A DNA stretch of 64,000 nucleotides, from the NCBI GenBank assembly GCA_013239625.1, contig MU054662.1, forward strand, positions 13,753,798 to 13,817,797. The letters are read 5' to 3'. The notes below the pieces were generated by a model, which was given only the letters and a program-made list of their open reading frames with translations, did not search any database and was not told where the DNA came from. The DNA is from Lama guanicoe (taxonomy: Eukaryota). Every line of letters starts with the position of its first letter. The stretch's first letter is position 1. Shown one piece after another: positions 446-54,849 of the stretch. The translations under genes and the position numbers were made by a program.

Positions 446-2009
446 TGCTTATCTCTGCAGAAAGCCTAGGTGGTCGATGGACAAGGCCGTGGCATGAAGG
501 GGACCCGCGCACAGGTGGCGTGGTGGAGAGGCAGCTGCGATGACGGCATTCTGATGGCTTCAGGCCCCCATCCCAGCTCTTCTTCTCCAGGACTGGCTGT
601 GGGACGCGCTCTGGGCAGAGAACGCTAAGGGCCTTTTCACGCCCCTGGACCACACACCCTTCGACGTGAACAGAACTGTGAGGCCTGGCACGGGCCAGGC
701 TGGCTAAAGTCCCCAGATGTGGTTGGGGACCACAGGGCAGCCACAGGGTGTCCTGGTTACCTGCTCTGAGGGATGGCCTTCGCGAGTGGGTCTGACCACA
801 GAGCCCAGCGGGTCCTGCACGGGTGCCTGGAGGAGGCGGGGCCACCCATTTGCTGGATAGAATGACGATGACGTTTGAGCAGAACGGTGCCGTGACCGAG
901 CCGGGGTGGGCTGGCTGGTCCGCAGGGGCCACACGAGGTGCACGGCCGAGTTCCCTTACACCTAGGCAGACCCCGTCATCACTTCTCCCAAAAGCGGCGT
1001 GAGCAAGATGCCGCGGCAGCTCCCGGCCCAGGCGCGCTCCCCCCAGCCTCGCTGGTCAAGTGGCCGCGCAGCCCTGAGGCTCAATGTCCGAGTGCGGCAG
1101 AGCCACGGCTGGAGGGGCCTGACGCCCAGCATCACCCTCCGGGTACAGTGACATGGGGGCGGGGAGACACAGGTGTTTTTGCCCGAAGAGCTAAGATCTG
1201 TGGGCTGTTCCCTGTTACACTTAGTTACTCAGAGACACTGTTCAAAGCACTTCCCCAAATCCACGCCCCTTTCTTTGTGAGGAGAGGGGCGTGTGCCTGG
1301 CCGGGGCCTCGCCACCAGAAGCCAGGACTTCCGCAGGAGAACCTGTGTGCTTCTCTCTCCGCTGCACCACAGGCTCGCTCCCCGGCGCTGAAAGCTGGTC
1401 ACGGGCGCTGTCATTGCCTCCTCCGCCGCCGGCCTGCAGCTCCGGGGGACCCGCCGTCGCTCTTCTCGAGAGGCGGGAAGAGGCAGGAGCGCAGGGGCGG
1501 AGGGCTCTCGAGACGCCGCTCCGAGAAGACGGAGGACGGCTGGCGGGCCCTCGAGCACTTGCTGTTTTGTCTGGTTCTTGTTCTGATTCTCGAAGTGAAG
1601 AGACGCCACTTAGCCGGGGGCCGCCTGCCTCCTCGTATCCCGCTCTCTCTCCCGACGAGGACTTGGAGGGGAATTTCAAGACGTGCGTGTAGGCAGGGAG
1701 GAGAGGGGCTGCTGGCAGGAACGGGGAGACGCAGCGGCCCGCCTCTCTGGGCTGCACGCTCCCTTGGATGGCGGCCGGGGATTAATCAGGGTCCGGTCCC
1801 CCTGCCACACATCCTGAGTGGAGCCTGGCTTGTGACCAACGTCACCCAGCAACGCGGCGTCCTTCCCTGACCGTCTTCCCCCACAACCTTCTTCCTCCCC
1901 TTTCTGCCTTTCTCAGCAGTGGTGAGTTCACTCCTTCAACGGGCTGGTGTGCCAGTTTCAACTACCTCCCAATCCAGAATGGGCGCGACAGACCCGCCAG
2001 GGGCGTCCT

Positions 2010-11487: not shown

Positions 11488-11520
<33 letters not shown>
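11488..11520. repeat. (CA)16 microsatellite
   Basis: Perfect CA run. Confidence 0.98.
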
Positions 11521-17682: not shown

Positions 17683-17975
17683 CCCACCAGTGGGCCAGCA
17701 CCAGCCCCAGGCCTGGCTTCACCTACCAGAGGGCAGGTAATAGCCCGGGGGTCTCCTGGACCCTGGATCCACCCACCAGCGGGCCAGCACCAGCCCCCGG
17801 ACTGGCTTCACCTACCAGAGGGCAGGTAATAGCCCGGGGGTCTCCTGGACCCTGGATCCACCCACCAGTGGGCCAGCACCAGCCCAGGCCTGGCTACACC
17901 CACCACAGGGCAGGCAATAGCCCAGGGGTCTCCTGGACCCTGGATCTGCCCACCAGCAGGCCAGCACCAGCCCCA
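17683..17975 (+). repeat. Tandem array of ~89-bp units (about 3.3 copies) in the L1 5'UTR
   Basis: The unit cccaccagYgggccagcaccagcccc...ggtctcctggaccctggatcca restarts at 17683, 17772, 17861 and 17949. Confidence 0.95.
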
Positions 17976-18486
17976 GGGCCCCTACAGGCTTTGAAGCCAA
18001 CCACCTCATGACCCAGCCCCACCAACCAGGGACCGGCAGCCTCCACACAAGGCAGGACCTGGCAACCAACCAGACCAGGCACCAGGCATGCCTACCAGAC
18101 CACCCCCATGGTCAGCCCACCACAGCAGCAAGACCCACACAGCCCTCTCAGCAGGAACCCCTGGAGCACATGGCTCGGGTGAAGAGAGGGGAGTGAGCTG
18201 CTGGGACGCACAGGACGTCCCCTGCAAAAGGCCACTTCTCCAAGGTCGGGCAATGCAACCAACCTACCAGATACACAGAAACGAAACAGCAAGTTAGGCA
18301 AAATGAGGCAACAGAGGGACAAGTTCCAAACAAAGGAACAAGATAAACCCCAGAAGAAGAACTGAGTGAGTGAAGATGTGCAATCTACCTGAGAAAGAGT
18401 TCAAGGTAATGATGGTAAAGATGATGGAACAACTTGGGAGAAGAATGGATGAACAAAGTAAGCACTTAGAAATTTTTAACAAAGAG

Positions 18487-18874
18487 GAAATTTTTTAAAA
18501 TTGTTTTAAGTTTTTAGAAACTTGTTTATTGAAGTATAATTGATTTACAATGTTGTGCTAGTTTCAAATGTAAAGTGACAAATTCTTTTTCAGATCATTT
18601 TCCATTGTAGGTTATTATAAGATATTGAATATCGTTCCCTGTGCAGTACAGGAGGACGTTGTTGTTTATCTATTTTATATATAGTCTTGTGTATCTGTTA
18701 ATCCCAAACTCCTAATTTATCTCTCCCTCCGCCTTTCCCCTTTGGGAACCATAAGCTTGTTTTCCATCTCTATGAGTCTATTTCTGTTTTGTAAATAAAT
18801 TCATTTGTGTCATATTTTTAGATTCCACATAAAAGTGATGTCAAAAAATTGTCTTCCTCTGTCTGACATACTTC
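18487..18874 (-). mobile_element. 5'-truncated younger L1 (cetartiodactyl-type 3' end) nested in ORF1 of the older L1
   Basis: T-rich tail followed by tttattgaagtataattgatttacaatgttgtg...agattccacataaaagtga...ctgacatacttcac. It is flanked by ACAAAGAG at 18479-18486 and 18875-18882, and the host ORF1 resumes after it. Confidence 0.9.
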
Positions 18875-19172
18875 ACAAAGAGTTAGGAAATATAAAGAAC
18901 AACCAGAGATGAAGAATATAATAACTGAAGTGCAAACTACATTGGGAACAGTCAACAGTAAACTAAACGATACAGAGGAACAGGTCAGTGAGCGGACGAC
19001 AGAGGAGTGGAAACCACTGAGGCTGGACAGGAAACAGAAGGAAAGGGACTGAGGACAGTATGAGAGCCTCTGGGACAACAGCAGGTGCATTACACTCACG
19101 TTATGGGGGTCCCGAAGGGGGGGAGAGAGGGAGGGGGGAGAGGACATATTTGAAGAATTAATAGCTGAAAAC

Positions 19173-19487
19173 TTCTTTTTTTCTTGATGAGTCTAGCTAA
19201 CAGCATGTCAATTTCATCTGTCTTTTTAAAGAAACAAATCTTAGTTTCATTAATGTTTAATTTTTTTATTCTGTATTTCATTTGTTTCTGCTCTGAAATG
19301 TACGATTTCTTTTTTCCTACTAAGTTTGGATTTCGTTTGTTCTTCTTTTAGTTCCATTTGCATGGAATACCATTTCCATCCCTTCACTTTGAGTCTGTGT
19401 TTGTCTTTAGATCAGCAGTGAGTCTTTTATAGGAAGCACATATATTTGTTTTGGTTTTCTATCCATTCAGCCACTCTATGTATTTTG
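19173..19487 (-). mobile_element. Inverted internal segment of L1 ORF2 (endonuclease N-terminus plus linker)
   Basis: The minus strand encodes NINETKICFFKKTDEIDMLLARLIKKKR (ORF track 19096..19281) and endonuclease-like sequence (plus strand: ccatttgcatggaatacc...cttcactttgagtctgtgt, tccattcagccactctatg). Confidence 0.85.
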
Positions 19488-20113
19488 AGAGAGGGCACAA
19501 ATCAATAAAATTAGCAATTAAAGAGGAGAAGTTACAACTGACAAGACAGAAATATAAAGGATCATCAGAGATTACTAGGAGCAACTATACGCCAATAACA
19601 TGGACAACCTAGTAGAAATGGACAAAATCCATTAATATATCTATATCATATATATAAAATGAAATTGTGGCATTTGTAAAAACATGGATGGACCTGGAAG
19701 GTGTTGTGCTTAATGGAATAAGTCAGACAGAGAAAGACAGATACTGTACGACATCACTTAAATGCAAAATCTAAACAATAAAAAAATCTAGTGGATATAA
19801 CAAAAAAGAAGCAGACTCACATAGAGAACAAACTGTTGTTACCAGTGGAGGAGGGGGAGGAATAGGGTAAAGGATTAAGAGGTATAAACTACTGTGGACA
19901 AAATAAATAAGCCACAGGGTATACCGTGCAGCGCAGGGAATTTAGCCAACATTGTATGGTAACTATAAACGGAGTGTAGTCTGTAAAAGGTTTGAATCAC
20001 TGTTTTGCACAACTGAAACTAATGTGTAATATTGCAAGTCAACTATTCCTCCACTGAGGAAAGGGGAGGGTGTCCTTGGGTTCTCTGTCAACGCGCTGCC
20101 GTTTTTTAAGAAG

Positions 20114-26400: not shown

Positions 26401-28634
26401 AAACAATCAGCCTGCAAAGCAGCGCAGACCAGTGTCGACGTCCAGGCGCGTCGAAGCACAGCCAGAAGGGACTCAAATCCAGGAAGGGAGCCTCCACTGA
26501 GGTCGCCAGGCCCTGGCGGGGAGCCGGTACGACCTCAAGACAACTCATACCTAAGGAATGAAACAGCAGGCGGCGTGGCTGGGGGGCGGGACCACGGGAA
26601 GCAGCCCGAACACGCCAGCCGGTCGGGAGGCCGCAGGCCCAGGAGGGGGACGAGCTCCAGGAGGGGGGCTGCCGCGCACGGGGAAGACTCCAGTGCAGGA
26701 GTCAGAACTGGAGGACGGGGGGAGCCGACACCCGGGGCGAGAGTTCTCTTTGTTCACGGAAACGGACGCTGACTTACAGCCAGCTGGCCAGCAAACGGGG
26801 CTGCAGAGAGAGTGCCTGAGCCCCTCTTCTGTGCGACAGGAGCGGACGCAGCCGTGGGGGACGGGGCTGACTTGTGAGGACGGCCAGCCAGCCGGGACCG
26901 TGGAGAGCCGGAGGTCGTCCGTGGCACCGGCTAAGCTAAGACGGGGTTTCCAGGGAACAGAGTGGAACACGGAGCTGCTTCGCTGCAGAGTCCGCCGGAC
27001 TCCCGCCCCTGCCGTGTGCGGGGCTCAGCGGTGGAGCCCGGGGAGGGGCACCTGCTCGCCCTGCGGCCATTACCCTGCTCTTCCATCATCTCCCGGGTTT
27101 GCTCCTTTACGCTCTTTCTAGCCACTTTCCCAAAAGCCTTTTATCTTGCCGTCCCTAATACCTATCATTTACTTCAATTTGCTCCCCCGTCAGAAAGTCC
27201 CCTCGGCGACCCCAAAGGTGGGGCCCTCACACACCCGCGGATGCCGGAATAACCTGTCCCTTGCGGTATTTTTAGCTTTTCAAACCTCATGCTTTTCATT
27301 TTGCAGAGGATGCCAAGGGGATGAGGGAAAAGCTGCAGCAAGGAGGGAAAATCAATATCCCGCAGGAAGCCACACGCTCCCACTGTTTGCTCTTGTGTCA
27401 GACGCCAGGTTGTGGAGGGACATTTTTGCAAAGTCTGAGACGGCTCCTCTTCTCCCGAACACTTAGTGCAGAATGCTTCCGAAGGTCTGGTCTCCCGGGA
27501 GAAAGGTCAAAACTTCAGAAGTGCGCTTTACAACTCGAAAGACGGCAGAGACACAGCAAAGGTGGGGGATCATGGAGAACCTTGGTTCTCTCCCCCTCTA
27601 GGAACCACCTCAGGGAGAGAAGGGGCGAAGGAGGCACAGCCCTGAGGAGACGGCCGGGCGAGAATCTAGTTGCTACAAGTGTTCTTGGCTTATTTTATCG
27701 TTCCTGGAGAAATTCACGGAAATCGATTTAATGCTGGTCTGCTCCTTCTGCAAAATGTGAATCCTGGGCCCCATTTGAATGCGTGGCATCAGCTCCCATG
27801 TGGAAATAGCGTATACAGGCAGACGCTTTGAACGCCAATGGAAGATCACCTCTCCCTTGATTTAAAACATCTTTTAAATTACTTTCGAAACTCCACTCTG
27901 CTAGAGTTGACTTTGAAGACAGACTCGTGCGCTCAGCAGTGCAGTGCCAGGCGGCCACCCCGCCATCCGTGAAGAGCCCGGGGACACAGTGTGCCGAGGA
28001 CGACAGTCACCAAGCACAGAGATCGTGGACCAGTGCAAAAATACGGAGTTACTTACTGCACAACACGCCCGGTGCTAGATGTGAGTAACACGAGACACCA
28101 GGGGGCGCTTAGAAGCAGCCCGTGAGAGACGCATGAGGGTTAAGAAAGCCTCGTGGAGGCAGCGACCTCTCCTTGAGACCTGAAGGGTGCACAGGAAGTA
28201 AACAGCTCCAGTGAGGGCAGACAGATTCATTTCGGCAGAAGGAGCCATGTGGGGAAAGGCTCCCGGCGAGGGAGGAGGAAGGGAAAGGGCTCCGCACGGC
28301 CGGAGCCAAGACGCAGGGGGCGGGGACGTGGTCGATGGACGCGAGACCACACCAGACTTCTGACGCGGGCGTCGTGTAGGCCGTGGCGGCTACGTGTTGA
28401 CCTGGGGCAAGCGGTGGGAGTGGCTTTGTCTACCTTTCTGGCTTTGAAGTTTCTGGAGGCTAGCCAAGTGCTCTTATTTAAAGATGTGAGACTCTGAGAC
28501 ACAGAAGAAATATCTGTGCTAGAAATGAAACAATAACAGGTGGCCAGCGACCAACAAAACGACCACAGACGTGCCAGACCCCTACCGGAGGCAAGCGCTG
28601 TGCTAAATGTGTTGAGTACGTTATCTCATTTCAC

Positions 28635-28730
28635 TTTTTTTAACTGAAGTTAGGTTGATTTACCGTGCGGTTGTTCGTCTCTGGGGCAGAGCACGGTGAC
28701 TCGGTCACCCACACACACATCATTTCCTGT
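28635..28730 (-). mobile_element. Very short L1 3' tail fragment
   Basis: ttttttttaactgaagttaggttgatttaccgtg...gcacggtgactcggt resembles the antisense L1 terminus (TTGAAGTATAGTTGATTTACAATG...ACAGCATAGTGATTCAGT). Confidence 0.6.
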
Positions 28731-29339
28731 TACTGCCCGTGTGAGGTCGGTGCCACTTAGAAAGGAGACGATGACTCCTTTCATGTGTGCTCAAAAAAAT
28801 AGAAAAGCTTTATGTAACTGTGAATTCACTTACCAGAATTATTATCATTAGCAATCACGCATCTATAATCGGACGGTTATTTATTTGACAATATGTTTTG
28901 TGTCTGTATCTCCGCAAAATCCTTGCAGGCTGGGACTCAGAGGTATATAAACAGAAGTTCAGGAGTCAGTATATGGCACGTAGAAAGAACTCAAGAGGAA
29001 AAAAGAAGAACGAGGAGATAAAAAAGTGAACGCACATCCTCTCGGACACAGGAAGATTTCCAGAAGGAGCAGTAAGTGTCCCGTGCGCAATCTTTTTCGG
29101 ACAAAGGAATGTCACCGTGGTAAACAGGTTCTGAGGAAGCCACCAACTTCCAAAGCACATTGTCTTACAAATCACCCCCTCATTACAAAAATTCACAGTA
29201 ATTCAAAGAGGCTGCCACAGGGTGTGCAAGTTCTTAAAAGTCATCACAAGACACAGGCACTGACTTAGCTCTAGTCCTGTCCTGGTTTAAGAATCTCTAA
29301 GTTAAAAAAAAAAAACAGATTTTTTTCTTCTGTCACTAC

Positions 29340-29675
29340 CCAGCTTCCACGGCATTGTAACAGCCTAAAGACGCAGACGCTGAGTTTATGAGGCAAATAA
29401 TGGAGCTGACGGATGGGTCTGCACTCGGAGGGGTGGAATGAAGATTGGACCAGGGACGGCCAGGACCGGAGGGGCCCGCTCCCTTCCGTCCGCCCTGCAA
29501 GGAGCCCTGGTCAGCCGAGGCACTGCGACTTTGGCATAAATCAGGGGCAGGGACGATGAGTGTGGAGAAACGGCCTGGCAGCCACGGCGCTGCACCCATA
29601 AATCAGCGACTGATTCAATCCTGCGAGATGCCTCGTTTGATTAATTTATGTCAGCATTTTCTCTGCTGTCAGGCT
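29340..29675. promoter_or_regulatory. Candidate PBX-HOX/MEIS developmental enhancer
   Basis: Reverse-complement TGATTTATGC (29534-29543) and TGATTTATGG (29596-29605), TGATTAAT (29638-29645), TGTCA (29649-29653) and CTGTCA (29666-29671), all in non-repeat DNA. Confidence 0.5.
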
Positions 29676-30229
29676 CAGTCCCCAAGCCTCCCCCTTCCCT
29701 GGCGCAGAGAGGGGCCCCTCCCTACCACCAGGAAAGCAAGGAGGAAACGGGGCACCAGAGAAGATTCTAGAAGGACTCGCAGGACTCGCAGAGTCTCCCC
29801 CAGCGCAGCGAGGAGGGGACAAGGACAGGCTGTCACGGGGAAGCCAGGTTCCAGGTCGGATGACGCAGCCACTGTGCTCTCCCGGGACCACCCTTCTCTG
29901 CGCTTCACAGGGACAGAGGGGAACACGCCCGTCACCCCTGCGACAGCGACACGACGGCTTTCTTAGCAAAAGTAGAAAATGCATCCGTGCTTCATTCTCC
30001 TGATGCAAAAGGAATTGTGAGCATCACCCCTTGTAACAGCAGAGAACTAGAAACCACCCAGAGACCCAGCGACAGGAAAGCAATCGTGCCGCAGCAGCAG
30101 AGGAAATGCAGGCACCCACCAGCACAGAAAGCAATGCTCGTGTGCAAGAAATGCTCCCGGAGTGCTGCTCAGTGAAAACCACCCAGGGCTGAACAGCTGA
30201 ATTTGTGTGTGTTTCTGGGGGAGAAAAAG

Positions 30230-30713
30230 TATGTCTGTCTGTATTTTGGTCTCTATTATTTTAGTCTACCAAACTACGCTCTAAGTGTTTATGATAAATA
30301 CCTATTTCTCGTGCACTGGGAACAAGAACCGAAAGAGCCGTCTTAACAAAGACTACAGAGGGGGCACCACAGTCCCGGAGGGAGAACTGGGACCTGCCTG
30401 TCACAAGCTCGCGGGCGCCGTGAAGAGACCCTCGGTGTGCGGGACCAGCCTGGCAGCCGTAAGAGGAGGCCAGGCCGCGCTCGGGCGGGCCCGGGTCAGC
30501 GCGGGCAGGCGGAAGACGACCACAGCTTGGGTCGGGGGAAGCGGCAGCGGCCAGAAAGGAGGTGGCCGAGTGGAAGGGCCCGGCCCTTGCGGGGCCGCCC
30601 GGCCGCGTGCAGACGCGGCGCGTCAGTTTCGGGGCTGACGGCGAGCGGGTTCGCTCAAAGCCCGACGAGTCATCTCCGCTGCTGCTCACTTACGTCACCG
30701 TTATTACGAATGT
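30230..30713 (-). other. Putative 3' UTR of a composite (read-through) terminal exon, with variant poly(A) signals
   Basis: In-frame TGA at 30714-30716. Minus-strand CATAAA (30288-30293), AATAGA (30252-30257) and AATACA (30240-30245) are followed by a U/C-rich tract. There is no canonical AATAAA. Confidence 0.35.
30400..30700. promoter_or_regulatory. Small intragenic CpG-island-like tract
   Basis: Very dense CG dinucleotides (e.g. gcgcgctcgggcgggcccgggtcagcgcggg, gcggggccgcccggccgcgtgcagacgcggcgcg) just downstream of the microexon on the minus strand. Confidence 0.55.
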
Positions 30714-30728
30714 TCATACCTTACTTAC

Positions 30729-30740
30729 GTTGGTGTATAG
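30729..30740 (-). CDS. AGAP1: 12-nt neural-type microexon (LYTN in phase 0); 21-nt variant 30720-30740 (LYTNVSK); host gene tentatively AGAP1
   Basis: Minus strand reads ...ttttatttttttttccctctccttttgctacacttgtaaag|CTATACACCAAC|gtaagtaag|gtatga. It has a very long pyrimidine tract, an AG-free zone of about 50 nt, a UCUC element, UGC at -16..-14, a consensus GTAAGT donor and a frame-preserving length. The gene name is inferred from similarity of layout to the recalled AGAP3/CRAG junction (NIFT-ICAT-VSN...), not from a flanking exon in this window. Confidence 0.65.
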
Positions 30741-33700
30741 CTTTACAAGTGTAGCAAAAGGAGAGGGAAAAAAAATAAAAAAACAGAACAACTAGCTTTT
30801 CCATTACGGGCTGCAACCCATGACAGGCAGCATCTATCAAAAACACGGTCTCTCTGTTCACACATTTAATTAGGAAGCTTGGAATTGAAAGGGAAGGACA
30901 GGGAAGGATGACGCGCCCTGAAGGAAATCCTGTAACTCACTGACTGCGTGTGTGTGTGTGTATTTTAAGGGAGTCTGGAGTTAAAGTGTGTCTGGTACTC
31001 GGCACTGGGCTGACCAAGCCCCTCAGGACGGGGAGCAGGATGAGACGGACGCACCGAGAGCCCCAGCTCTGTCTTCCTTTGTAGGCGAAACCTGCGAACC
31101 TACGGGCCAGTGAGAATGCTCAGTGAATGAGACGAGCGTGTTGGGAGCCTGGTCCTTCGGTCGTTAAAGAAGTGCTGAATGAACCTAGAGAGGGGGCGAG
31201 CCACTGGCTGGAGACCATGGGGAACACCCCAGCTCTGGCCGTCCGTCACCAACACCACGAGGTTTACAGAAGTCCAGCTCGCCTGGGGTCTCCGGGGGCG
31301 GGGTCCCGGAGTCCACACTTCCAAGGGGTTCCCACACGGCCCGGCACACGGGGCCACTCTGGCTGCCCACCTCCCGGGGGCCTGGCGGGAGGAGGCAGCG
31401 GGTCTTACCAACGAGAAGCTCTGAAATCGCCCTCCTCCCAAGGCACTGATTCTGCTCTCCAGGGTCTTCCATCCTGTGTTTGACACCTTGGGACGTCCAA
31501 GACGAAATGTGCCCCCCCAGTGCTAAATAACTGCCCTGCTCTCTGCGGACGACGCGCCCTCAGGGGCTCACGGAGGAAAACCCAGGGAACAGGAGAAAGG
31601 TCTTCCTTTGCAAGACGGGACTCTTCTGAGGGCTGGCGGATCTCTCAGGGCTGAAATCCGCGCTGAGGAGGGCCCAGGAGATCAGCCATTCCCATGATGT
31701 CTCGCTTCTGGTGAGACACAAACACCTCACCCTCTTTAAAATGTAAAGAAAAAGTGCAGCAACGTAATTTGCGTGGTTATCGAAGCCGAGCAGATCTCTT
31801 GCTCTTTGCCGATACCAACCGGGGCTCCCTGACCGCCAGCCGTGCCCTCCAAGGATGAAAGAGCAGGAAGGAGGGAAGAGGGACCCTTTAGCTAAAGAAG
31901 GCGGCCAAGGGAACGCTCAGCGCGGCCCGTCCCATCTCTGAGGAGGTACCAGGAACCCCCAGCAAGAGATGCAGGTGCTGGGAGTTTCCCAGCAAAGCCA
32001 CGTGTCAGGAAGTGAGGGGTTCAGAGCCAAGATGCCAAAGGGCAGCCCGCTTTCAAGGAAAGCAAAGTGAAACGGGAAACCAAGGTCCTGGTTAAGTGGT
32101 GCGCAGCGCCGCGGCCAGTGAGGGTTCCCGTTACAGGGATCGAGGAGGAACCGAAGCAAAAGACTGTGGGGGGGGCGGGGGACACTGAGAGCTGTCACAG
32201 ACCCCTGTCCTCGCAAAGCACAAAGAAACCCTTTCCTCCTGGAGAACCACAGGGGAGACCACCACCAACTCAATTAGCCGGTCTAGCCCACGACCCGCCG
32301 ACGCGAGGGCCCGAGTGTGCCAAGGAAACTGAAAAGGTGCTAATCTCGGCGAGCCCGTCACACGAGGGGGCTGGCAAAGAGGCCATGTGGTGCCATCCTG
32401 AGCGCAAATAAAACCTCGTTATGAGACCTTCCTGTGGGGCCACAGCTCCGATTATAGGTGTGTCTACCGAAAAGGAAACCGCACGAACCCCAGCCTCATG
32501 GGACTCCCGGGCAGCACGGAACTCTGAGAATAAAATCAGTGTTGAGCGAAAGCCGCTTGAACTCTGCCAAAAGCAAACAGGAGTGCTCTCTTGCTGCGCA
32601 GTTTCTGCTGGGGAGAGCAGAGGGAGAACTCTTAATCATCCCACACTGTGCCCTAAATCCAGTCTCCTTCTGCAGAGTCACATCTCACCATCTAGGAAAA
32701 CGTCTCCTCCACAAGGAGGGTCCGCAGACCTGCAGAATTTCCTGAAGAAAAAACAGCCTGGCTGATGGCAGCTGAGAAATAAGACGCTCGTGTTACTGCA
32801 TCACAGTCTCATGACTGCAAAATAGCTTCTTCCCCCAGATACTGTGAGATAAGTACCACCTCCTTAAAAAAAATCACTGCACAGCCTCACTCTTCCATTC
32901 ACTGATTAAAGACCTACTAACCTGAAAAAATCCTACCCTAGTTTTTTGGGAACGTGTCATACAGGAGACCACGGTGATGTTATTTTAAGAGATACAAAGA
33001 ATCATACGGCTTGAACTTTTGCCTTCAAGGTGCTTATAATCCACGTGGAGATACCAGACAGACATTCAAAACATGACGAGAGGTAAAAGGTGGTGTCTGA
33101 GTTAGTGCCAGAATGAGCTACAACGCTTATGAACCTCAGAGAAACCCATCCCCCGAAGAGACAGTGAGCGCGTGCAGACTCCCCAGGGCCGCAGGGCACG
33201 CCTGCACGTCCACACTCTGAACACGCAGCTTGGTTTCCGAAGACGCTCGAGTCCACACGTGGAGACACGCCTCCCTGGCGGTCACCAGGGCCCCACTTAT
33301 TTGTGCAACACAAACCACGGCCGTGTTTGACACCATCCAGCCCCGTCGTCCAGCGCAGCAGAGGAGGTCCGAGACGGAACAAGCGAGGGGGGAGGCAGGT
33401 CTCAGCCAGCAACCCGAGTCCTGGAGCAGAAGGAAGGGGGTTCAAATGACGGATGCTTCAGGCCAGGAGCAGCCGGCGTCTGTGGTCTGAGCTTCACTCA
33501 CCAGTCTGTTTCCTCGCTTCTCCAGCCTTCATCAAGTGCCCAGACACCACGAGAGGGCAAGGCGTGACGATCACGTGCAAAGGGGCTGGCTTCTTACGGA
33601 GGTCGGATGAGGCCTCCGCGGCGAGGTGGCCCTCGGGCTCCCGGGCCTGAAGGATGAGGGGCTGTGCCTGAGACGCAGTCTGGGAGGCGGGCGGAGGGGC

Positions 33701-35204
33701 AGCTGCAGGGGAGAGGGCTTCCCGCGAGGAGGGGGCAGGAGAGCCAAGACAAGCTGGTCTGAGTGGCGAGCAGGGCGGGGCAGCTGCGTCCGGCGGCGCA
33801 GACAGAGGGGCGCTCCGCGGGCCCGCCGCTCCGTGCGCGTGAAGCCACGTCCGCAGAGCTGTCAAACCCAGGCCCATTAAGTGAGCGTCTCCTTAAAGTA
33901 ATTAAGACAGGGAACAGCACTTCAGTTCAGTGGGACAGTAGGGCTTTGTTACCGAGCAGGCAGCTATTCACAGAAGACACCGATCGCACGTGATTAAGTC
34001 TCACCAGGTCTGTCCTCAAGCACCCTCGTTTAATGTGGAGCGATGACGCGCTCCAGGATGGGTGGGCGTCTTTGCCCAGGCAGCTGACAAGCGGGGAGCT
34101 GTTCCCACGGCGCATTTCCACCTCATTCTAAGCGCTTCCTTCCCAAGTCTGGATTCCTTCGCTCCCCGGGGCCCTGCGTGCAGGGTAAGCCGACTTCGCC
34201 TTTGGAAATTTTGTTTGGTGACCAGCTTGGTTTTCCCCCCTAATGTTGACGCTAACGGGTTTCATTGCAGAACATTTCTGGAAACATCTACAAAGCCAGC
34301 ACTACAGAGCTTTCAAACCTCACACTCGGAAGTCTTGGGTGCAGAGACGCCAAGGTAAGAACTGCAACGCGGTAATGACAAACTCCGCACCTCTCGGCGA
34401 GGCGGCACCAGCCAGCGCTCCCTAGATGAGGCCCACGGCAGCTGAAGAAAGACGCGAACCGACACCCATAATCAGAGCCCCTCCAACTGCGTTAGGACAA
34501 TCGCGGTCCAGGCCCATTCGTGTTTGTATAAGATTGTCTGGTTTCCCACACTAAAAGGTCTTTTATGACCAACCACCAACACCGTAACAGCAGTGCTAAG
34601 TGAGAAGAAAAGCCACTGAAATTAATCCAGCTTTCTGCCTGCATTTCCCCGTGCCAGCAGGGCCTCTCAGAGCGGCTGCGGGCTTCAGCCAGCCCCAGGG
34701 AGGGCAGACACTCCACGACGGACCCCGGGGGAGGAGACACTGGTCGCACAGTGGGATGTGGAGGGCGGGAGGAATTAGAGACACCTGCGCCCAGAGAACA
34801 GTCCAGAGGCTAAATCCACCGAGAAAACTCAAGGGGAAGGGGGGGCAGAGAACGGGTAGGGGTGAGGAGCAGGGCAGACTGTGCACTCCGGTTCTCTGGC
34901 CCCACGACGACTTTATTCCAGAATCACCACCACGAGGAGAGAAGACGGTCTTAACTCCCGCTCCGCAGACGTAGCGGCTCAAACACAGACAGCTTATGAT
35001 CCCATAAAGTGCATGAATAGTGATTCTTGAATTAAATTCGCAGCAGACACACACGAGTACTGTTTTCCCAAGCAGTCACTTTGAGGACACGCATCCTCAT
35101 TACAGTGACGACGTGACCACAGCTGTGGGCTTTCACAACAAGGCAGGCAGCGTGGCTGGCACAGTGCGGGGGGCAGGGAAGGCGGTCAGAGGGACCCGAT
35201 GGCA

Positions 35205-35302
35205 GTGGTGATGGTGGTGTGTTTATGTGCGTGTGGTGGGGAAGCATGTGTGTGTGAGTGAGTGTGTGGTGGGCAGATGTGTGTATGTGTGTGTGTTTGT
35301 GT
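35205..35302. repeat. Degenerate (TG)n low-complexity tract
   Basis: gtggtgtgtttatgtgcgtgtgg...gtgtgtatgtgtgtgtgtttgtgt. Confidence 0.8.
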
Positions 35303-37149
35303 GGCAGGGAGGAGATTACAGATGATGCAGACAGAGCCCGGGAGGATCTGGGCCCTCAGGCAGCGCAGCCTCTGAGCGGAGGACAGACACAATCTGACTT
35401 GCACTGTCCGGGGCTCTGTCTTGAGAACAGACCCCAGGGAGCAGGGAGGCTGGTCAGGAAGTAACCGTGGTCCCTGGGCTGGCAGGTGGCGGTGCAGGTG
35501 AGGAGTGGAGGTGATGCCACACTCAGACATGTACCTAAGGCCACATCCACACACTGTGGCTCATGGTCTCACTGGAAACACACTCCCCTCACCCACCCCT
35601 GTCGGGTGCAGTTTTTGCCAAGGCCACCTCTCCTGGGGTGTCCAGCAGGAATTCCAGAGGGAGGTCCTGGGTGGGTCACAGCCAACTTCAGAAACAGCTC
35701 TGCAGGATGTTCGCTTCAGCCCTGATCTTCTCCACGGAGAGTTCCCGCTGTCAGACGCTGCCTGCCCCAAGCTGAGATGCCCAGCCAGTCTCATGCTTGC
35801 CTGATCGGGCGAGTTTCCCCTGCTCACTTCTCCCCCAAACCACCCTCCCTTTCTGCTCCACGAAGAGAGGGGCAGACGCCAAGTGCACCAGAGCTAAGAG
35901 AGGCTGGGCCTTCCACTCTCAAAAGGCGGACTGTCACCTGTGCCACAGCGCCTGCCACAGCTGCTGCAGGGAGGAGGTCTGAACGGCGCCTCCTTCCCCA
36001 GGGCTAGGTCTGCCATCATGTGCACACCGTGCACAGTGTGTGTGCCGCGATGTCTCTCACTTCCCGTGACCTCTGCAATACCCCTGGGAAGTGTGTTGTG
36101 CTGATGGAACTGTCCCAGGGTTTAATATTTTTTCCAACTTATAGAGGAACAGGAGATGAACAGAGTGAAATAAACCACTCAGATCACACAGCGGACGAGT
36201 GGCGGAGCCAGGACACAGTTCTGAGACGCTCTGCTCCTGGAACACAGCATTCCAGAGCCCTGAGTCAGCTCTGGGGACAACAGAAAACAGGTGTCTGTCC
36301 CAGCTGAAGCTCCAAGGATTTCCCACCGAGTGTCCAACCTCTAAAACTTACGACCCTTTTATTCTCAGGAGCAAATGACACCAGTCACCGGAGAGAAGCT
36401 TTCTTTCTGGTCAAGAAACAAAGAACGGAGTCACCTCCCCAGAAGCTGGACCACAGCTCCCACCAGGAACGGGCTCAGTCCTCACCCACGTGCCCTCACG
36501 CACCACAGGGCTCCTGGGAGCCTCGTCCACCCCCGGGAGCAAACGTTAGGACCCTGTCTTTGGGCAAGTCTCTCTTTACCATTGACGCGGTCTCGAAAGT
36601 CAACGGCCAGGATAAGACAATCCATCACTTAGTCTGAGGAGCAGTGGGAAAGGGCCTCATGCCCGCCCTGCTGTTCTCAAGCCCACGGCTTTCCTGCTGC
36701 CACAAGTTTCGCTCAAAAAGGGGGAAAAATAAGGGAGGAAATGTTTATTTCTTCTTCCATAGAAAATAGAAGATTGGATTAAAAATCATTTACGATGTGT
36801 CTGATGTGAAAGATAAAAGGAAATTATCACAGGTGCAGGGGACAGAATATTGGTTCACAATGAGAAAACGTTTTCTAAAATAAGGAATATTGTGCACCCA
36901 GAGTTTGGGAAGGAAATTTAGTAACTGGGAAGTAATGAGAATCTTCTCTTTTACTTCCTGTTTCTGACAGTAGGGACTTGTCTTCCCCCAGATGACAGAG
37001 GGGCCGTCCCTAATGTGTCCCCGTTCGTGAGGCTGTGACATACTGTGCCGACCCCGAACACACGGCCTTCCCGTCCCTCGCTCCTCACCGGGCTGCCGCC
37101 GCCCTCGGACCCTAGGAGAGCCGCCTTCACAAGGGACTTGTGCCCAGAG

Positions 37150-42314: not shown

Positions 42315-42384
42315 AAGGAAGGAAGGAAGGAAGGGAGGAAGGAAGGGAGGGAGGGTGGAAGGAAGGCAGGGAGGGAGGAAGGAA
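42315..42384. repeat. (GGAA/GGGA)n purine tract
   Basis: aaggaaggaaggaaggaagggaggaaggaagggagggaggg...ggaaggaa. Confidence 0.9.
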
Positions 42385-50598: not shown

Positions 50599-52218
50599 TG
50601 CCGAGAAGAACAAATACACAGGCCCTGCTGGGTTCTCTGCAGACCGGGAGCTCGCCCTCACGGGGAGGGGAGCTGGGCGTGAGTTCGCTCTGCTGCTCCT
50701 CCCTCCTTCAACCACTGCCTTCGCGCGTCTCCTCAGCCAACAGTGAGCATCTCTGCCTTCGGGTGAAGGTCATGGGGCACCTGGAAAGCTCGGCACGGAG
50801 AAGCTGTTGGCCGCTACTCAATTCAGGGACTTCCTGCACAAGGCTTTTCTCCTTCAAAATACAGCCAACAGGCAGGTGTGAAATACGACAGAAATGAAGA
50901 CACGAGATTGGGAGGTGGACTAGCGGGAAGGGTAAGGCATCCTCCATCTCTGGCTGGACCTGTCTGTGAGCTGTGAACCACATGGGACTCCTGGAGGCCA
51001 GGTTGGTGACACGTCGCTATATCTACCTGTCAGATCATTCCACATGCTTTAAAATAACATAATTTCTATTTATTGCAGGAGAGTTTAAAAAGTTGCAGTG
51101 GAAAGAGGAATGTCTTTCATCAGAACAGAACTGGCATCATCAGTAGGAAATACTTCAATGCTACAAAAATACATATTCAGAAAATCAAAGGTCAAGCAGA
51201 ATGAGGACAAGGTTATCATCTGAATTCAAATCAAAAGAAAACCAACAAACTGGTCACTTAACATGAAAATCGTCTGTAAACCCAGGTTTGAAATGCCTGT
51301 CTGGATTTTCACATGAGAGGGTCGTGTTCCCCGAGCCCTGAAGTCCACCCTCACTCTGTCCTCTGTGATTCTGCACAGGGAAGAGGCCTGCGTTACTTGG
51401 CTTTTAATCGTGCGACGCACAGCAAGTCTTTATGAAAAAGGACTTTATGCCATCTGGGCACCAGGGACGACGTGAAGGCTGCCAGCGGCTGACCCTTCAC
51501 GGTCCCCCGTGGCCCACGCCGGCCTCTGTGACAACGCGCAGACGCGCAGAACCAGGTGGAGAGTGAGTGCCTTTTATACATACGTGTAGTTTTGGTGGGG
51601 TGACGCTGGGGGCTTGGGAACACGCTTTAGGACGACAGACGTCCTAGGGATGAAAGCAATCTCAGTTTCTCAAAGGGCAGGAGAGCGATGGGGAGGGACC
51701 GGAGAGGACGCTCGAGCTCCTGCAGCTGTTGTTTCGCGCAAGTGTGAAAGTCAGAGTTCGACAGCTGATTTTGACCTGAGATAAACGTCACATCTGTGTT
51801 ATCCCTGGTGACTGAGAATCCCGGGAAGATGCTCTCTGGTACAAGTCACATTTTGCGTTTACAAAACCTAGAGCCACACACAGAGGGAAAGAGCAAGGGC
51901 TCTGGGCTCTAACAGACCCGAGTTCAAATCCTGCCTCCCCAAGACGTCACGGTGTGAAGGGAGAGGAAGAGATGGCTCTGGCACAGACCCCAGACCCCAC
52001 AGATCGCCGGGGCAGTCACTTCACGTGCTGGTTCGGCTTCCTGTCGGGGAGGGCAGACCCTGGGACCGTCCTGAGCCCTGCAAGAGCTGGCGCACGGCGA
52101 GGTTTCCAACGGCGCCTGGCGCCCACGGTCGGCACCTCACACTGTCACCACCTCCCTGTACAAGGCTGGTAGTGGCACGGCTACACCACGGAATGCTGTC
52201 TTAAGGCTTGAAAATCAT

Positions 52219-52577
52219 GAGACAGAGAAAGACAAATATCATACGGTATCTCTTAAATGTGGAATCTAAAAATAATTGATACAAGTTCTATTAACAAACC
52301 AAAAACAGACTCACAAACAGAAAAACTATGGTTACCGAAGGGGCAAGGGCAGGGAGGGATAATTAGGGGTTGGGGATTAACAGACACATTATTATGTATA
52401 AAATATGCAAACAACAAGGGCTTTGACATAGCACTAGGAAATATATTCAATATGTTGCAATAACATACAATGGAAAAGAACGTGAAAAGAAAATATGTAT
52501 GTACGTGTACATGCGACTGAATCGCTTTGCTGTGCACCTGCAACTAACACTGTAAATCAACTACAGCTCAATAAAAA
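52219..52577 (+). mobile_element. 5'-truncated L1 3' end (cetartiodactyl L1_Art-like)
   Basis: gacagagaaagacaaatatcat...tgtggaatctaaaa...ctatggttaccgaagggg...tgctgtgcacctgcaactaacactgtaaatcaactac...aataaaaa. Confidence 0.9.
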
Positions 52578-54849
52578 TTTTAACAAGTAAATAAATATAT
52601 ACACACACATATGTATATAAAACAATGCATAAAAAATGCTTCATACAGAGCCTAACACAATAGACACGCCAGGTGGATGGGGGACCCCTATCATCAAAGA
52701 CCAGAGTAGCTGCAGACACGAGTGCAGCTGCCCACACTCCTGTCTGTCCGTGCTGCCCCCTCTTGGAGACGCTGGCACATTCAGTTCTCTCTCTGCCACC
52801 AAGTAGCCCTGGAACCGTCAGGAAGTCGCCCAGCTGGAGGCCTCAGCATCCTGAGCTGCAAGGTGTAAACGCTAGATGATCAAGGCCTTTCAGCTGTGAA
52901 CCTGCTGGACCCTATGACTCTTCAGTGCGTGCGCTCAGGGTGTGTAAAGGCAGGAGGGAGAAGGTACTGTTCGCCATCACTCCCCGAACATCTCGTGCTC
53001 CTGGAACCCACGATCCTAGGCCAGGAGGTGAGTAGGGCTGGTGGGTTTGGGAGGAGAGGCTGGCCCAGAAGCGGGTGCCCAGGGTTACTCCGAGAGATCA
53101 CCAGGGCCGCCCCAAGGTCACGAGCCCTTTTACCCTGCGCCCTGTCTGCCCTTGGGTCACGGTGTGCTTGACCCCCGGGGCATGACAACAAGAAACGCGC
53201 TAACTCGGAAAATTCTCCTGGTCAGCAAGTCTGTTAACGAACAGAGCGCCCACTGTGACGCTCCACTGCCCTCTGTGTCCCCGCAGCGGGCTCACCTGAC
53301 CCTCCGGGGGTCTCCCGGAGGACGGCCATGAGGAGCAGCGCACGTGACGGTGGCGGCTCTGACAGGCTGTGGACAGCACCGCCGTGACTCCAGCTCAGCC
53401 TGTAGCTGCATGAGCCCCAGACCCAGGCTCTCTGTTTGTGAGGCGACGGGGCTGGGTGGGGCCCACAGAGCCCCGCTGGCTGCCAAGATCCTTCAGGTTC
53501 CGATTCCGACCACCCATCCATTCAGAGAAAACTGTGTCAGCGATGGTCCCCGACTGCTGGGGGCAGGGGCGCCAGAGGCCGCAGTGCGGCAGGTGCCCTG
53601 GACAAGACCGCGTGAGTGGCTGAATTCACGCAGGAAGGATGTGGTCAGAATCACGACCGAGCCACAGTGGACAGACCAGTGGGTCTCCCTGGAGTCAGCT
53701 CGGGCAGAGGACGTGTCACAGAGCGATGCACTGAGCCTCTCTTAGTCACTCAATTCCTGCACGAACACACTGGCAAGATAAGGTTAAATGAAGTACGTCA
53801 GGGGGCGTGAGAAGTCTGACGCCAGGGCTGGTGCCCACGCGTCTGCACTGCTGAGCAGCAAGCAGGAGACACTGCCTCGGACGCGCACCCGACGCGCTCC
53901 CCTGCGCGCCGCCTTCCCAGGCTCCCTTAACCCCGTGCCTCCTCTCAGCAGGAATCCGTCAGTGCCGGCCCTCCCAGAAGGACGGCCGTGTAAGTAAAGA
54001 CATTTCACCTAGGTCACTGCTTCCTCTAGGACCACAGGAGCACATTTAGGCTGGAGCAGGTTACAGTGCAGGGTACGGGGCTTCCCATCTGCTGGGAACC
54101 ACGCCGCCCCCGGCTACGTGTCCTCACGTCTCCCAGGGGAGCCCTGCTTTAACGTCTCCCACGGATGCCTCAGGACCAAAGCCACCACAGCAGGAAGAGG
54201 ACAGACCGATCTGAGAGCAACCACGGCAGCACGTCTTCACCAGGACAGCTGCCCTCTGTCCTCTCACGGGACTAGCGCTCACTGCAGACCTCATTTATCA
54301 GGAAGGCCTTTGCTGAACACTCTCCCTTCCCCCAGACTCCGCCAGCTCCTCGTCACACACACTACAGCACTCTGCCCTTCTCCGTCATGCCGCTGAATCA
54401 CAGCTGCAATTAAATAATTAGGGTGTAGATCTTTGTTTAACGCCTGTCTCCCCTGACGGATTACAGCTGTACGAGGCAGGGCGGTAGGAAGCCCCGCCAT
54501 CCCAGTTTCTGCCTCGGACCCGGGGCGGCAGAGGTGTCCAGCAGTTCTGCGCCGAGAGGATGAGTGTGAAGTTACGTCTTGGGAGGTGTACGAATGAAAG
54601 GCTCACGTCGCTGATCCACATTTTAGGATTAAAATAGAAATGTGGGTGTGCACGCTCTGAGATGGACTCTGACAACCAGCTCACCCACCAGAATAGACAC
54701 CTGGGGGCAAACACAGCAATTTGAATTTGAAAGACATTATATTATTCCTCAGACGGAAGTTTCCAGTAACCTGTGTAACACACTGTGTTCTGGGCAGTTG
54801 GCTTTGGAGTCTCCACCAGACAGGAGCTCTCTTGGTGGGAGACTGCTGA

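What the first reader, a model, noticed from the sequence alone, without database searches (positions are those of the whole stretch)
30686..30800. Neural microexon wired as a multi-outcome switch (skip / +LYTN / +LYTNVSK / LYTNVSKV-stop)
Seen: on the minus strand a very strong 3' splice site (long U/C tract, UCUC, UGC 14-16 nt upstream) precedes CTATACACCAAC. Two frame-preserving donors follow 9 nt apart (AAC|gtaagt at 30728 and AAG|gtatga at 30719), then an in-frame TGA at 30714-30716. Only phase 0 is open through the 21-nt form. Established: UCUC plus UGC just upstream of the 3' splice site is the SRSF11/SRRM4(SRRM3) microexon enhancer. Inference: one acceptor, probably neuron/endocrine-activated, could give a 4-aa insert, a 7-aa insert, or a truncated protein by read-through and intronic polyadenylation. 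That would make microexon inclusion the gate for a short isoform.
Basis: partly seen in the sequence, partly recalled or inferred. Interest (0 to 1): 0.85.

Follow-up and report, generated by a model that had tools for sequence, protein, structure and literature searches.

The report
Candidate 12-nt neural microexon, unverified
The splice-like motifs are really there and look like a textbook brain-type 12-base microexon inside a very long intron, but I found no evidence that it is expressed or conserved, and nothing supports the proposed "multi-outcome switch".

Summary
The layout matches published SRRM3/4-type microexons. It has a weak proximal 3' splice site, a long distal pyrimidine tract with CUCUC, and UGC at -14 to -16. 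It also has a 49-nt AG-free zone, one branch-point-like A at -35, a 12-nt exon and strong donors. Only two such patterns occur in the window, against 0.05 expected. The six donor-like GTs just downstream are the densest non-repeat cluster in the window.

Strand asymmetry fits a long minus-strand transcript. No other coding exon is recognisable in the 64 kb. The host gene is therefore unproven, and AGAP1 is only a lead from other first-reader notes of this scan.

Expression and conservation could not be tested.

The switch idea has no support. The nearest AATAAA is 1.8 kb downstream. An in-frame stop soon after a donor is expected by chance. LYTN assumes phase 0.

Verdict: a plausible ordinary microexon, about even odds of being real, and probably already catalogued if it is.

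The parts
30775..30779 (-). Branch-point-like UUUAU; candidate branch A at 30776, 35 nt from the AG
   Evidence: It is the only A in a yUnAy context inside the AG-free zone 30791-30743. Read; inference, no experiment.
30757..30790 (-). Long pyrimidine tract (34 nt, 3 purines) containing CUCUC at 30765-30761
   Evidence: The Y fraction over -5..-55 is 0.80, at the 99.9th percentile of all AGs on this strand.
30754..30756 (-). UGC motif 14-16 nt upstream of the exon, between the pyrimidine tract and the AG
   Evidence: The position matches the UCU_CUC[N1-50]_UGC enhancer described in bioRxiv 10.1101/2024.09.17.613571.
30741..30742 (-). Acceptor AG (context AAAG|C), the first AG after a 49-nt AG-free zone
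   Evidence: The classical matrix score is 4.2 bits, 89th percentile, so the proximal context is weak.
30729..30740 (-). Candidate 12-nt microexon CTATACACCAAC. It reads LYTN in phase 0; the other two phases are also open.
   Evidence: It is one of only two microexon-type patterns in the window.
30723..30728 (-). Donor 1, AAC|GTAAGT; gives the 12-nt form
   Evidence: 7.7 bits, 98th percentile of GTs on the strand.
30714..30719 (-). Donor 2, AAG|GTATGA; would give a 21-nt form. It contains the in-frame TGA at 30716-30714.
   Evidence: 7.9 bits, 98.5th percentile; it lies in a weak predicted 5-bp hairpin.
30684..30698 (-). Second group of donor-like GTs (GTGACG, GTAAGT, GTGAGC); it overlaps a CRE-like TGACGTAA
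   Evidence: Together with 30728-30714 it forms the densest non-repeat cluster of strong GTs in the window.
30300..30700 (.). Compact CpG island (GC 0.65-0.74, CpG observed/expected 0.8-1.1) next to the donor cluster; role unknown
   Evidence: the strongest CpG-island-like segment in the window.

Best explanation
This is most likely a single 12-nt, frame-preserving alternative microexon of the SRRM3/SRRM4-dependent neural or endocrine class. It sits deep in a very long intron of a gene transcribed on the minus strand.

Proposed mechanism (inferred from the published model, not shown here):
- The AG has a weak proximal context, so the exon is skipped by default.
- In cells that express SRRM4 or SRRM3, the factor binds the UGC at -14 to -16.
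- Factors on the CUCUC/pyrimidine tract, and U1 snRNP on the strong GTAAGT donor, add to this. The extra donor-like sites downstream may help recruit U1.
- Early spliceosome components are then recruited, and 12 nt (4 codons) are inserted.

The second donor, the in-frame TGA and the further GT motifs are best read as incidental or as auxiliary U1 sites, not as programmed alternative outcomes.

The host gene may be AGAP1, which has a catalogued, highly conserved neural microexon of unknown function. That identity is not shown here.
For: - All motifs are present at the stated places.
- The architecture matches the published description of SRRM3/4 microexons: strong 5' splice site, pyrimidine tract and branch point displaced from the AG, a weak 3' splice-site context, and a bipartite UCU_CUC...UGC enhancer.
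- The pattern is rare: 2 in the window against 0.05 simulated.
- The distal Y content is at the 99.9th percentile and both donors are at the 98th percentile or above.
- The site has the densest non-repeat cluster of donor-like GTs in the window.
- The segment is unique in the window, so it is not a dispersed repeat or a retroposon tail shared with other copies.
- The window has A>T on the + strand in 28 of 32 bins (skew +0.068). That is the asymmetry expected if the minus strand is the sense strand of a long transcription unit (the link to transcription is from established knowledge).
- No other exon is visible, which fits a giant intron.
- AGAP1 has a conserved neural microexon with 79% human-chicken identity in its flanks.
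Against: - There are no RNA reads, no junctions and no orthologous sequence.
- Cryptic microexons with UGC and UCUC motifs but near-zero inclusion are known, so motifs alone do not prove use.
- The other pattern match in the window (+ strand 1917, 5 nt) looks like chance. This suggests a real-DNA background near one per 100 kb.
- The adjacent CpG island with a CRE-like site offers a non-splicing reason for a distinctive, possibly constrained sequence block.
- The other AGAP1 notes of this scan lie on another assembly piece.
Confidence: 0.5

Rival explanations
1. It is a chance or cryptic pseudo-microexon. A T-rich tract, an AG and GT motifs happen to line up in an intron, and the site is never or almost never spliced. 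The distinctive block (AT-rich patch, retained CpGs, ACGTAAGT twice, CpG island) may instead be a transcriptional element such as an intragenic CpG-island promoter or enhancer with CRE-like sites.
For: - No expression or conservation evidence was obtained.
- Cryptic microexons with the same motifs exist.
- A second pattern match in the window looks like chance.
- The proximal 3' splice site is weak, with A at -3 and an 89th-percentile score.
- The strongest CpG island of the window lies next to the site and carries TGACGTAA.
- The local RNA folds are no better than shuffles.
Against: The full conjunction of features is much rarer than any one of them: an AG-free zone, a single well-placed branch A, CUCUC + UGC at the published distance, a length that is a multiple of 3, two 98th-percentile donors, and the correct strand for the transcription asymmetry.
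Confidence: 0.38
2. One regulated acceptor feeds several programmed outcomes: a 4-aa insert, a 7-aa insert through the second donor, or a truncated protein (…LYTNVSKV-stop) through read-through and intronic polyadenylation.
For: - Donor 2 scores as high as donor 1.
- Only phase 0 is open through 21 nt, and the TGA is in that frame.
- The unusual donor cluster shows that something beyond one 5' splice site is encoded here.
Against: - No canonical poly(A) signal lies closer than 1.8 kb downstream of the TGA.
- A stop within nine codons of intron is expected by chance.
- The phase of the host gene is unknown because no flanking exon was found.
- Four further donor-like GTs would give out-of-frame products, so the cluster does not single out the 12/21 pair.
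- No reads are available.
Confidence: 0.07

Closest known systems
SRRM3/SRRM4 (nSR100)-dependent neural microexons with the bipartite UCUC...UGC intronic enhancer (Irimia 2014 and Gonatopoulos-Pournatzis 2018 from my own knowledge; summarised in bioRxiv 10.1101/2024.09.17.613571)
   Same: - Length 12 nt, within the 3-27 nt range and a multiple of 3.
- UGC between the branch point and the AG.
- CUCUC in a long pyrimidine tract displaced upstream.
- Long AG-free zone and weak proximal 3' splice site.
- Strong 5' splice site.
   Different: - Neural inclusion, SRRM4 dependence and conservation are untested here.
- The dense stack of six donor-like GTs and the adjacent CpG island are not part of the standard description.
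The catalogued AGAP1 neural microexon (VastDB event studied in bioRxiv 10.64898/2026.01.16.699960)
   Same: - It is a conserved neural microexon in a very large gene, with highly conserved flanks.
- That paper reports a stem-loop enclosing the microexon and one downstream of it. The minimum-energy fold here also pairs the UGC region with GUGAGCAGC downstream and has a small hairpin after the exon.
   Different: - The paper's text gives neither the length nor the sequence of the event, so identity cannot be checked.
- No AGAP1 exon was recognised in this window.
- The fold here is no more stable than shuffled sequence (z = 0.3 to 1.0).
Tandem alternative 5' splice sites and composite terminal exons made by intronic polyadenylation
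   Same: Two frame-compatible donors lie 9 nt apart, and an in-frame stop follows them.
   Different: - There is no nearby poly(A) signal.
- There is no evidence that either the distal donor or read-through is used.

Membership tests
SRRM3/4-dependent neural microexon | Exon of 3-27 nt, usually a multiple of 3 | tested here: met
   12 nt between the AG at 30741-2 and the GT at 30728.
SRRM3/4-dependent neural microexon | UGC between the branch point and the AG, with a UCUC-containing pyrimidine tract upstream | tested here: met
   UGC at 30756-30754, CUCUC at 30765-30761 and a Y tract at 30790-30757.
SRRM3/4-dependent neural microexon | Branch point and pyrimidine tract displaced from the AG, a long AG-free zone and a weak proximal 3' splice site | tested here: met
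   The AG-free zone is 49 nt. The only branch-like A is at -35. The classical acceptor score is at the 89th percentile and the distal Y content at the 99.9th. These are in-silico results only.
SRRM3/4-dependent neural microexon | Strong 5' splice site | tested here: met
   AAC|GTAAGT scores 7.7 bits, 98th percentile of GTs on the strand. The matrix is approximate and written from memory, not MaxEnt.
SRRM3/4-dependent neural microexon | Inclusion in neural or endocrine tissue and skipping elsewhere; dependence on SRRM3/4 | not testable with these tools
The runs found were reproductive-tract RNA contigs and unindexed raw reads.
SRRM3/4-dependent neural microexon | Conservation of the exon and flanking intron across vertebrates | not testable with these tools
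   No vertebrate genome collection was available. The metagenome pattern scan was blank, and protein searches with local ORFs were blank.
AGAP1 microexon (catalogued event) | Lies between AGAP1 coding exons on the same strand | tested here: inconclusive
   No coding exon of any gene is recognisable in the 64 kb. A small first motif scan found nothing convincing.
AGAP1 microexon (catalogued event) | Same exon sequence and length as the published event | not testable with these tools
   Neither the papers' text nor the supplements held give the sequence or the length.
Composite terminal exon / intronic polyadenylation switch | Poly(A) signal within a few hundred nt downstream of the read-through stop | tested here: not met
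   The nearest AATAAA is at 28885, 1.8 kb downstream. The next ATTAAA is 3 kb downstream.

The most novel reading that the evidence does not exclude
The microexon is real, and the unusual stack of six 5'-splice-site-like motifs in the 45 nt after it is functional. It could act as a U1 snRNP landing platform that lets a 12-nt exon be defined, or as a set of competing donors that tunes a 12-nt versus 21-nt (+4 aa versus +7 aa) output. The CpG island next to it could couple the splice choice to local chromatin or transcription.
Probability: 0.1. Interest if true: 0.5.

Novelty: new member of a known kind. Interest (0 to 1): 0.25.

Why it matters
If real, this is one more instance of the conserved neural microexon programme. 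If the host is AGAP1, it is a catalogued event whose function is still listed as unknown, in a trafficking gene linked to neurodevelopmental disorders. That would be useful for annotating this genome, but it is not a new principle. The only part that could teach something new is the dense donor-like cluster and the adjacent CpG island. Their role in defining very small exons could be tested with a minigene.

Tried and rejected
2. Host gene from flanking exons. Scans by GC3-GC2 contrast, splice matrices and amino-acid composition found only L1 fragments and GC-rich noise.
3. Conservation. An exact 20-nt pattern in metagenome contigs gave 0 hits. I did not scan prokaryotic genome contigs, because any hit would be host contamination of unknown and possibly human origin.
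4. Orthologous spurious ORFs in the protein collection, using the 77-aa and 142-aa local ORFs, gave nothing.
5. Literature, for the sequence or length of the AGAP1 microexon or an 'LYTN' insert. The text has no sequence and the supplements were blank or not held.
6. Rfam found no family in the window.
7. RNA structure. The folds around the exon are no more stable than shuffles, so I make no structural claim.
8. Retroposon-tail origin of the T tract. The segment has no other copy in the window, so this is not supported, but it is not excluded without a repeat library.

Full report
**Observation**

- a pyrimidine-rich tract at 30790-30757, with CUCUC at 30765-30761
- UGC at 30756-30754, which is 14-16 nt before the exon
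- AG at 30742-30741
- the 12 nt CTATACACCAAC at 30740-30729
- AAC|GTAAGT, with the G at 30728
- AAG|GTATGA, with the G at 30719
- TGA at 30716-30714, in frame with the exon's first base

All three frames are open through the 12-nt form. The insert LYTN is therefore an assumption, because the host gene's phase is unknown.

**Is it more than chance?**

I scanned both strands for this combination: a pyrimidine tract with Y at 0.8 or more, no AG in the last 25 nt, a UGC within 30 nt, an exon of 3-27 nt, and GTRAGT. The scan finds two sites. One is this site. The other is a 5-nt candidate at + strand 1917. A second-order Markov simulation of the window gives a mean of 0.05. Real DNA has more pyrimidine tracts than such a model, so the true background is higher. 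The second hit suggests roughly one per 100 kb.

With approximate position matrices written from memory:
- The acceptor scores at only the 89th percentile of AGs on the strand. It has A at -3 and purines between -4 and -12.
- The pyrimidine fraction over -5..-55 is at the 99.9th percentile.
- Both donors are at the 98th percentile or above.

The last AG before the acceptor is at 30793-30792, which leaves a 49-nt AG-free zone. Inside that zone the only A in a branch-point-like context (UUUAU) is 30776, 35 nt from the AG (read).

This is the layout described for SRRM3/4-regulated microexons in bioRxiv 10.1101/2024.09.17.613571. That paper describes a strong 5' splice site, strong pyrimidine-tract and branch-point signals placed far from the AG, and so a weak 3' splice-site context. 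The space between holds a bipartite UCU_CUC[N1-50]_UGC enhancer.

**Surroundings**

- The 45 nt after the exon hold six donor-like GTs at the 91st percentile or above (30728, 30724, 30719, 30698, 30693, 30689). This is the densest cluster on the strand. The only comparable cluster in the window, at + strand 35217-35300, is a GT-rich simple repeat.
- The cluster runs straight into the strongest CpG-island-like segment of the window, at 30300-30700 (GC up to 0.74, CpG observed/expected about 1.0). It overlaps a CRE-like TGACGTAA.
- The exon and about 150 nt upstream form an AT-rich patch (GC 0.38) inside GC-rich DNA.
- The segment has no other copy in the window, so it is not a dispersed repeat.
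- The window is otherwise repeat-poor. It contains L1 fragments, and their 3' end looks, from my memory of L1 sequences, like a laurasiatherian mammal's.
- Base composition is asymmetric. A exceeds T on the + strand in 28 of 32 bins, with a skew of +0.068. From established knowledge of transcription-associated mutational asymmetry in mammalian introns, this is expected if the minus strand is the sense strand of a long transcription unit. That agrees with the strand of the candidate exon.
- Three different scans found no other credible coding exon in the 64 kb. This fits a position deep inside a giant intron. It also means the host gene cannot be named from this window.

**Host gene**

Other first-reader notes of this scan guess AGAP1 for this very site. 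They also place AGAP1 features on another assembly piece. These are unchecked AI notes, and I treat them only as a lead.

The literature confirms that AGAP1 has a neural microexon conserved between human and chicken. Its flanks are 79.3% identical, its average inclusion in human is 13%, and its function is listed as unknown. The same paper reports stem-loops enclosing the exon and downstream of it (bioRxiv 10.64898/2026.01.16.699960). Neither the sequence nor the length of the event is given in the text or supplements held.

The minimum-energy fold of the local RNA also pairs the UGC region with GUGAGCAGC downstream and shows a small hairpin over donor 2. However, the folds are no more stable than shuffled sequence (z = 0.3 to 1.0), so I give this no weight. 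I put the chance that the host is AGAP1 at roughly one in three.

**Expression and conservation**

These are the two tests that would settle the matter, and I could run neither.
- The look-up of sequencing runs listed three RNA runs from a reproductive-tract study that hold 6-10% of the sampled words of 27741-33740, plus DNA holders and unindexed raw-read runs.
- An exact 20-nt pattern across the exon and donor found nothing in metagenome contigs.
- Searching the protein collection with the 77-aa and 142-aa ORFs that overlap or lie next to the exon also found nothing. I had hoped to find spurious ORFs called on orthologous DNA of other species.
- Supplement searches in three microexon papers found nothing, or no supplement was held.

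**The 'multi-outcome switch'**

- Donor 2 is as good as donor 1 by matrix score, so a 21-nt form is conceivable. Four other donor-like GTs nearby would give out-of-frame products, so the sequence does not single out the 12/21 pair.
- The in-frame TGA nine codons into the intron is what chance gives.
- The nearest canonical poly(A) signal is 1.8 kb downstream (AATAAA at 28885), and the next ATTAAA is 3 kb downstream. There is no local signal for the proposed read-through and polyadenylation.
- The claim that microexon inclusion gates a truncated isoform is unsupported.

**Verdict**

The best explanation is an ordinary 12-nt SRRM3/4-type alternative microexon in a giant intron of a minus-strand gene, possibly AGAP1, at about even odds. 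The main rival is a cryptic or chance pseudo-microexon beside a CpG-island regulatory element, at about 0.4.

If the exon is real, it is a member of a well-known class and most likely already catalogued in other mammals, so interest is low. The one unexplained feature worth a bench test is the dense stack of donor-like motifs and the CpG island next to it.

Noticed in passing
window 30684-30728 (minus strand): Six 5'-splice-site-like GTs within 45 nt, including ACGTAAGT twice 35 nt apart. It is the densest non-repeat cluster in the window. The second copy overlaps a CRE-like TGACGTAA.
   Followed up: partly
window 30300-30700: A compact 400-bp CpG island (GC 0.65-0.74, CpG observed/expected 0.8-1.1), the strongest in the window. 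It lies right next to the candidate exon. It could be an intragenic promoter or enhancer. Three reproductive-tract RNA runs hold 6-10% of the words of 27741-33740, but which part could not be determined.
   Followed up: partly
It lies in an AT-rich patch about 1.1 kb from the exon.
   Followed up: no
window 1917-1921 (+ strand): The only other match to the microexon-type pattern (Y tract, UGC, AG, 5 nt CAGTG, GTGAGT). It is not a multiple of 3 and sits in a GC-rich region, so it is probably chance.
   Followed up: no
window 17683-17977: A tandem array of an 89-bp GC-rich unit, 3.3 copies, 91% matches.
   Followed up: no
window 18270-19900 and 52200-52600: L1 fragments in both orientations. The 3' end at 52480-52580 looks, from memory of L1 sequences, like a laurasiatherian mammal's L1. 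Apart from these, self-comparison finds almost no dispersed repeats in the 64 kb.
   Followed up: partly
whole window: GC is about 55% and CpG observed/expected is 0.5-0.7 throughout, unusually high for mammalian intronic DNA. A exceeds T on the + strand in 28 of 32 bins.
   Followed up: partly
window 35217-35307, 42315-42384, 11488-11520: Simple repeats: a GT-rich 31-bp unit, (AAGG)n and (AC)n.
   Followed up: no
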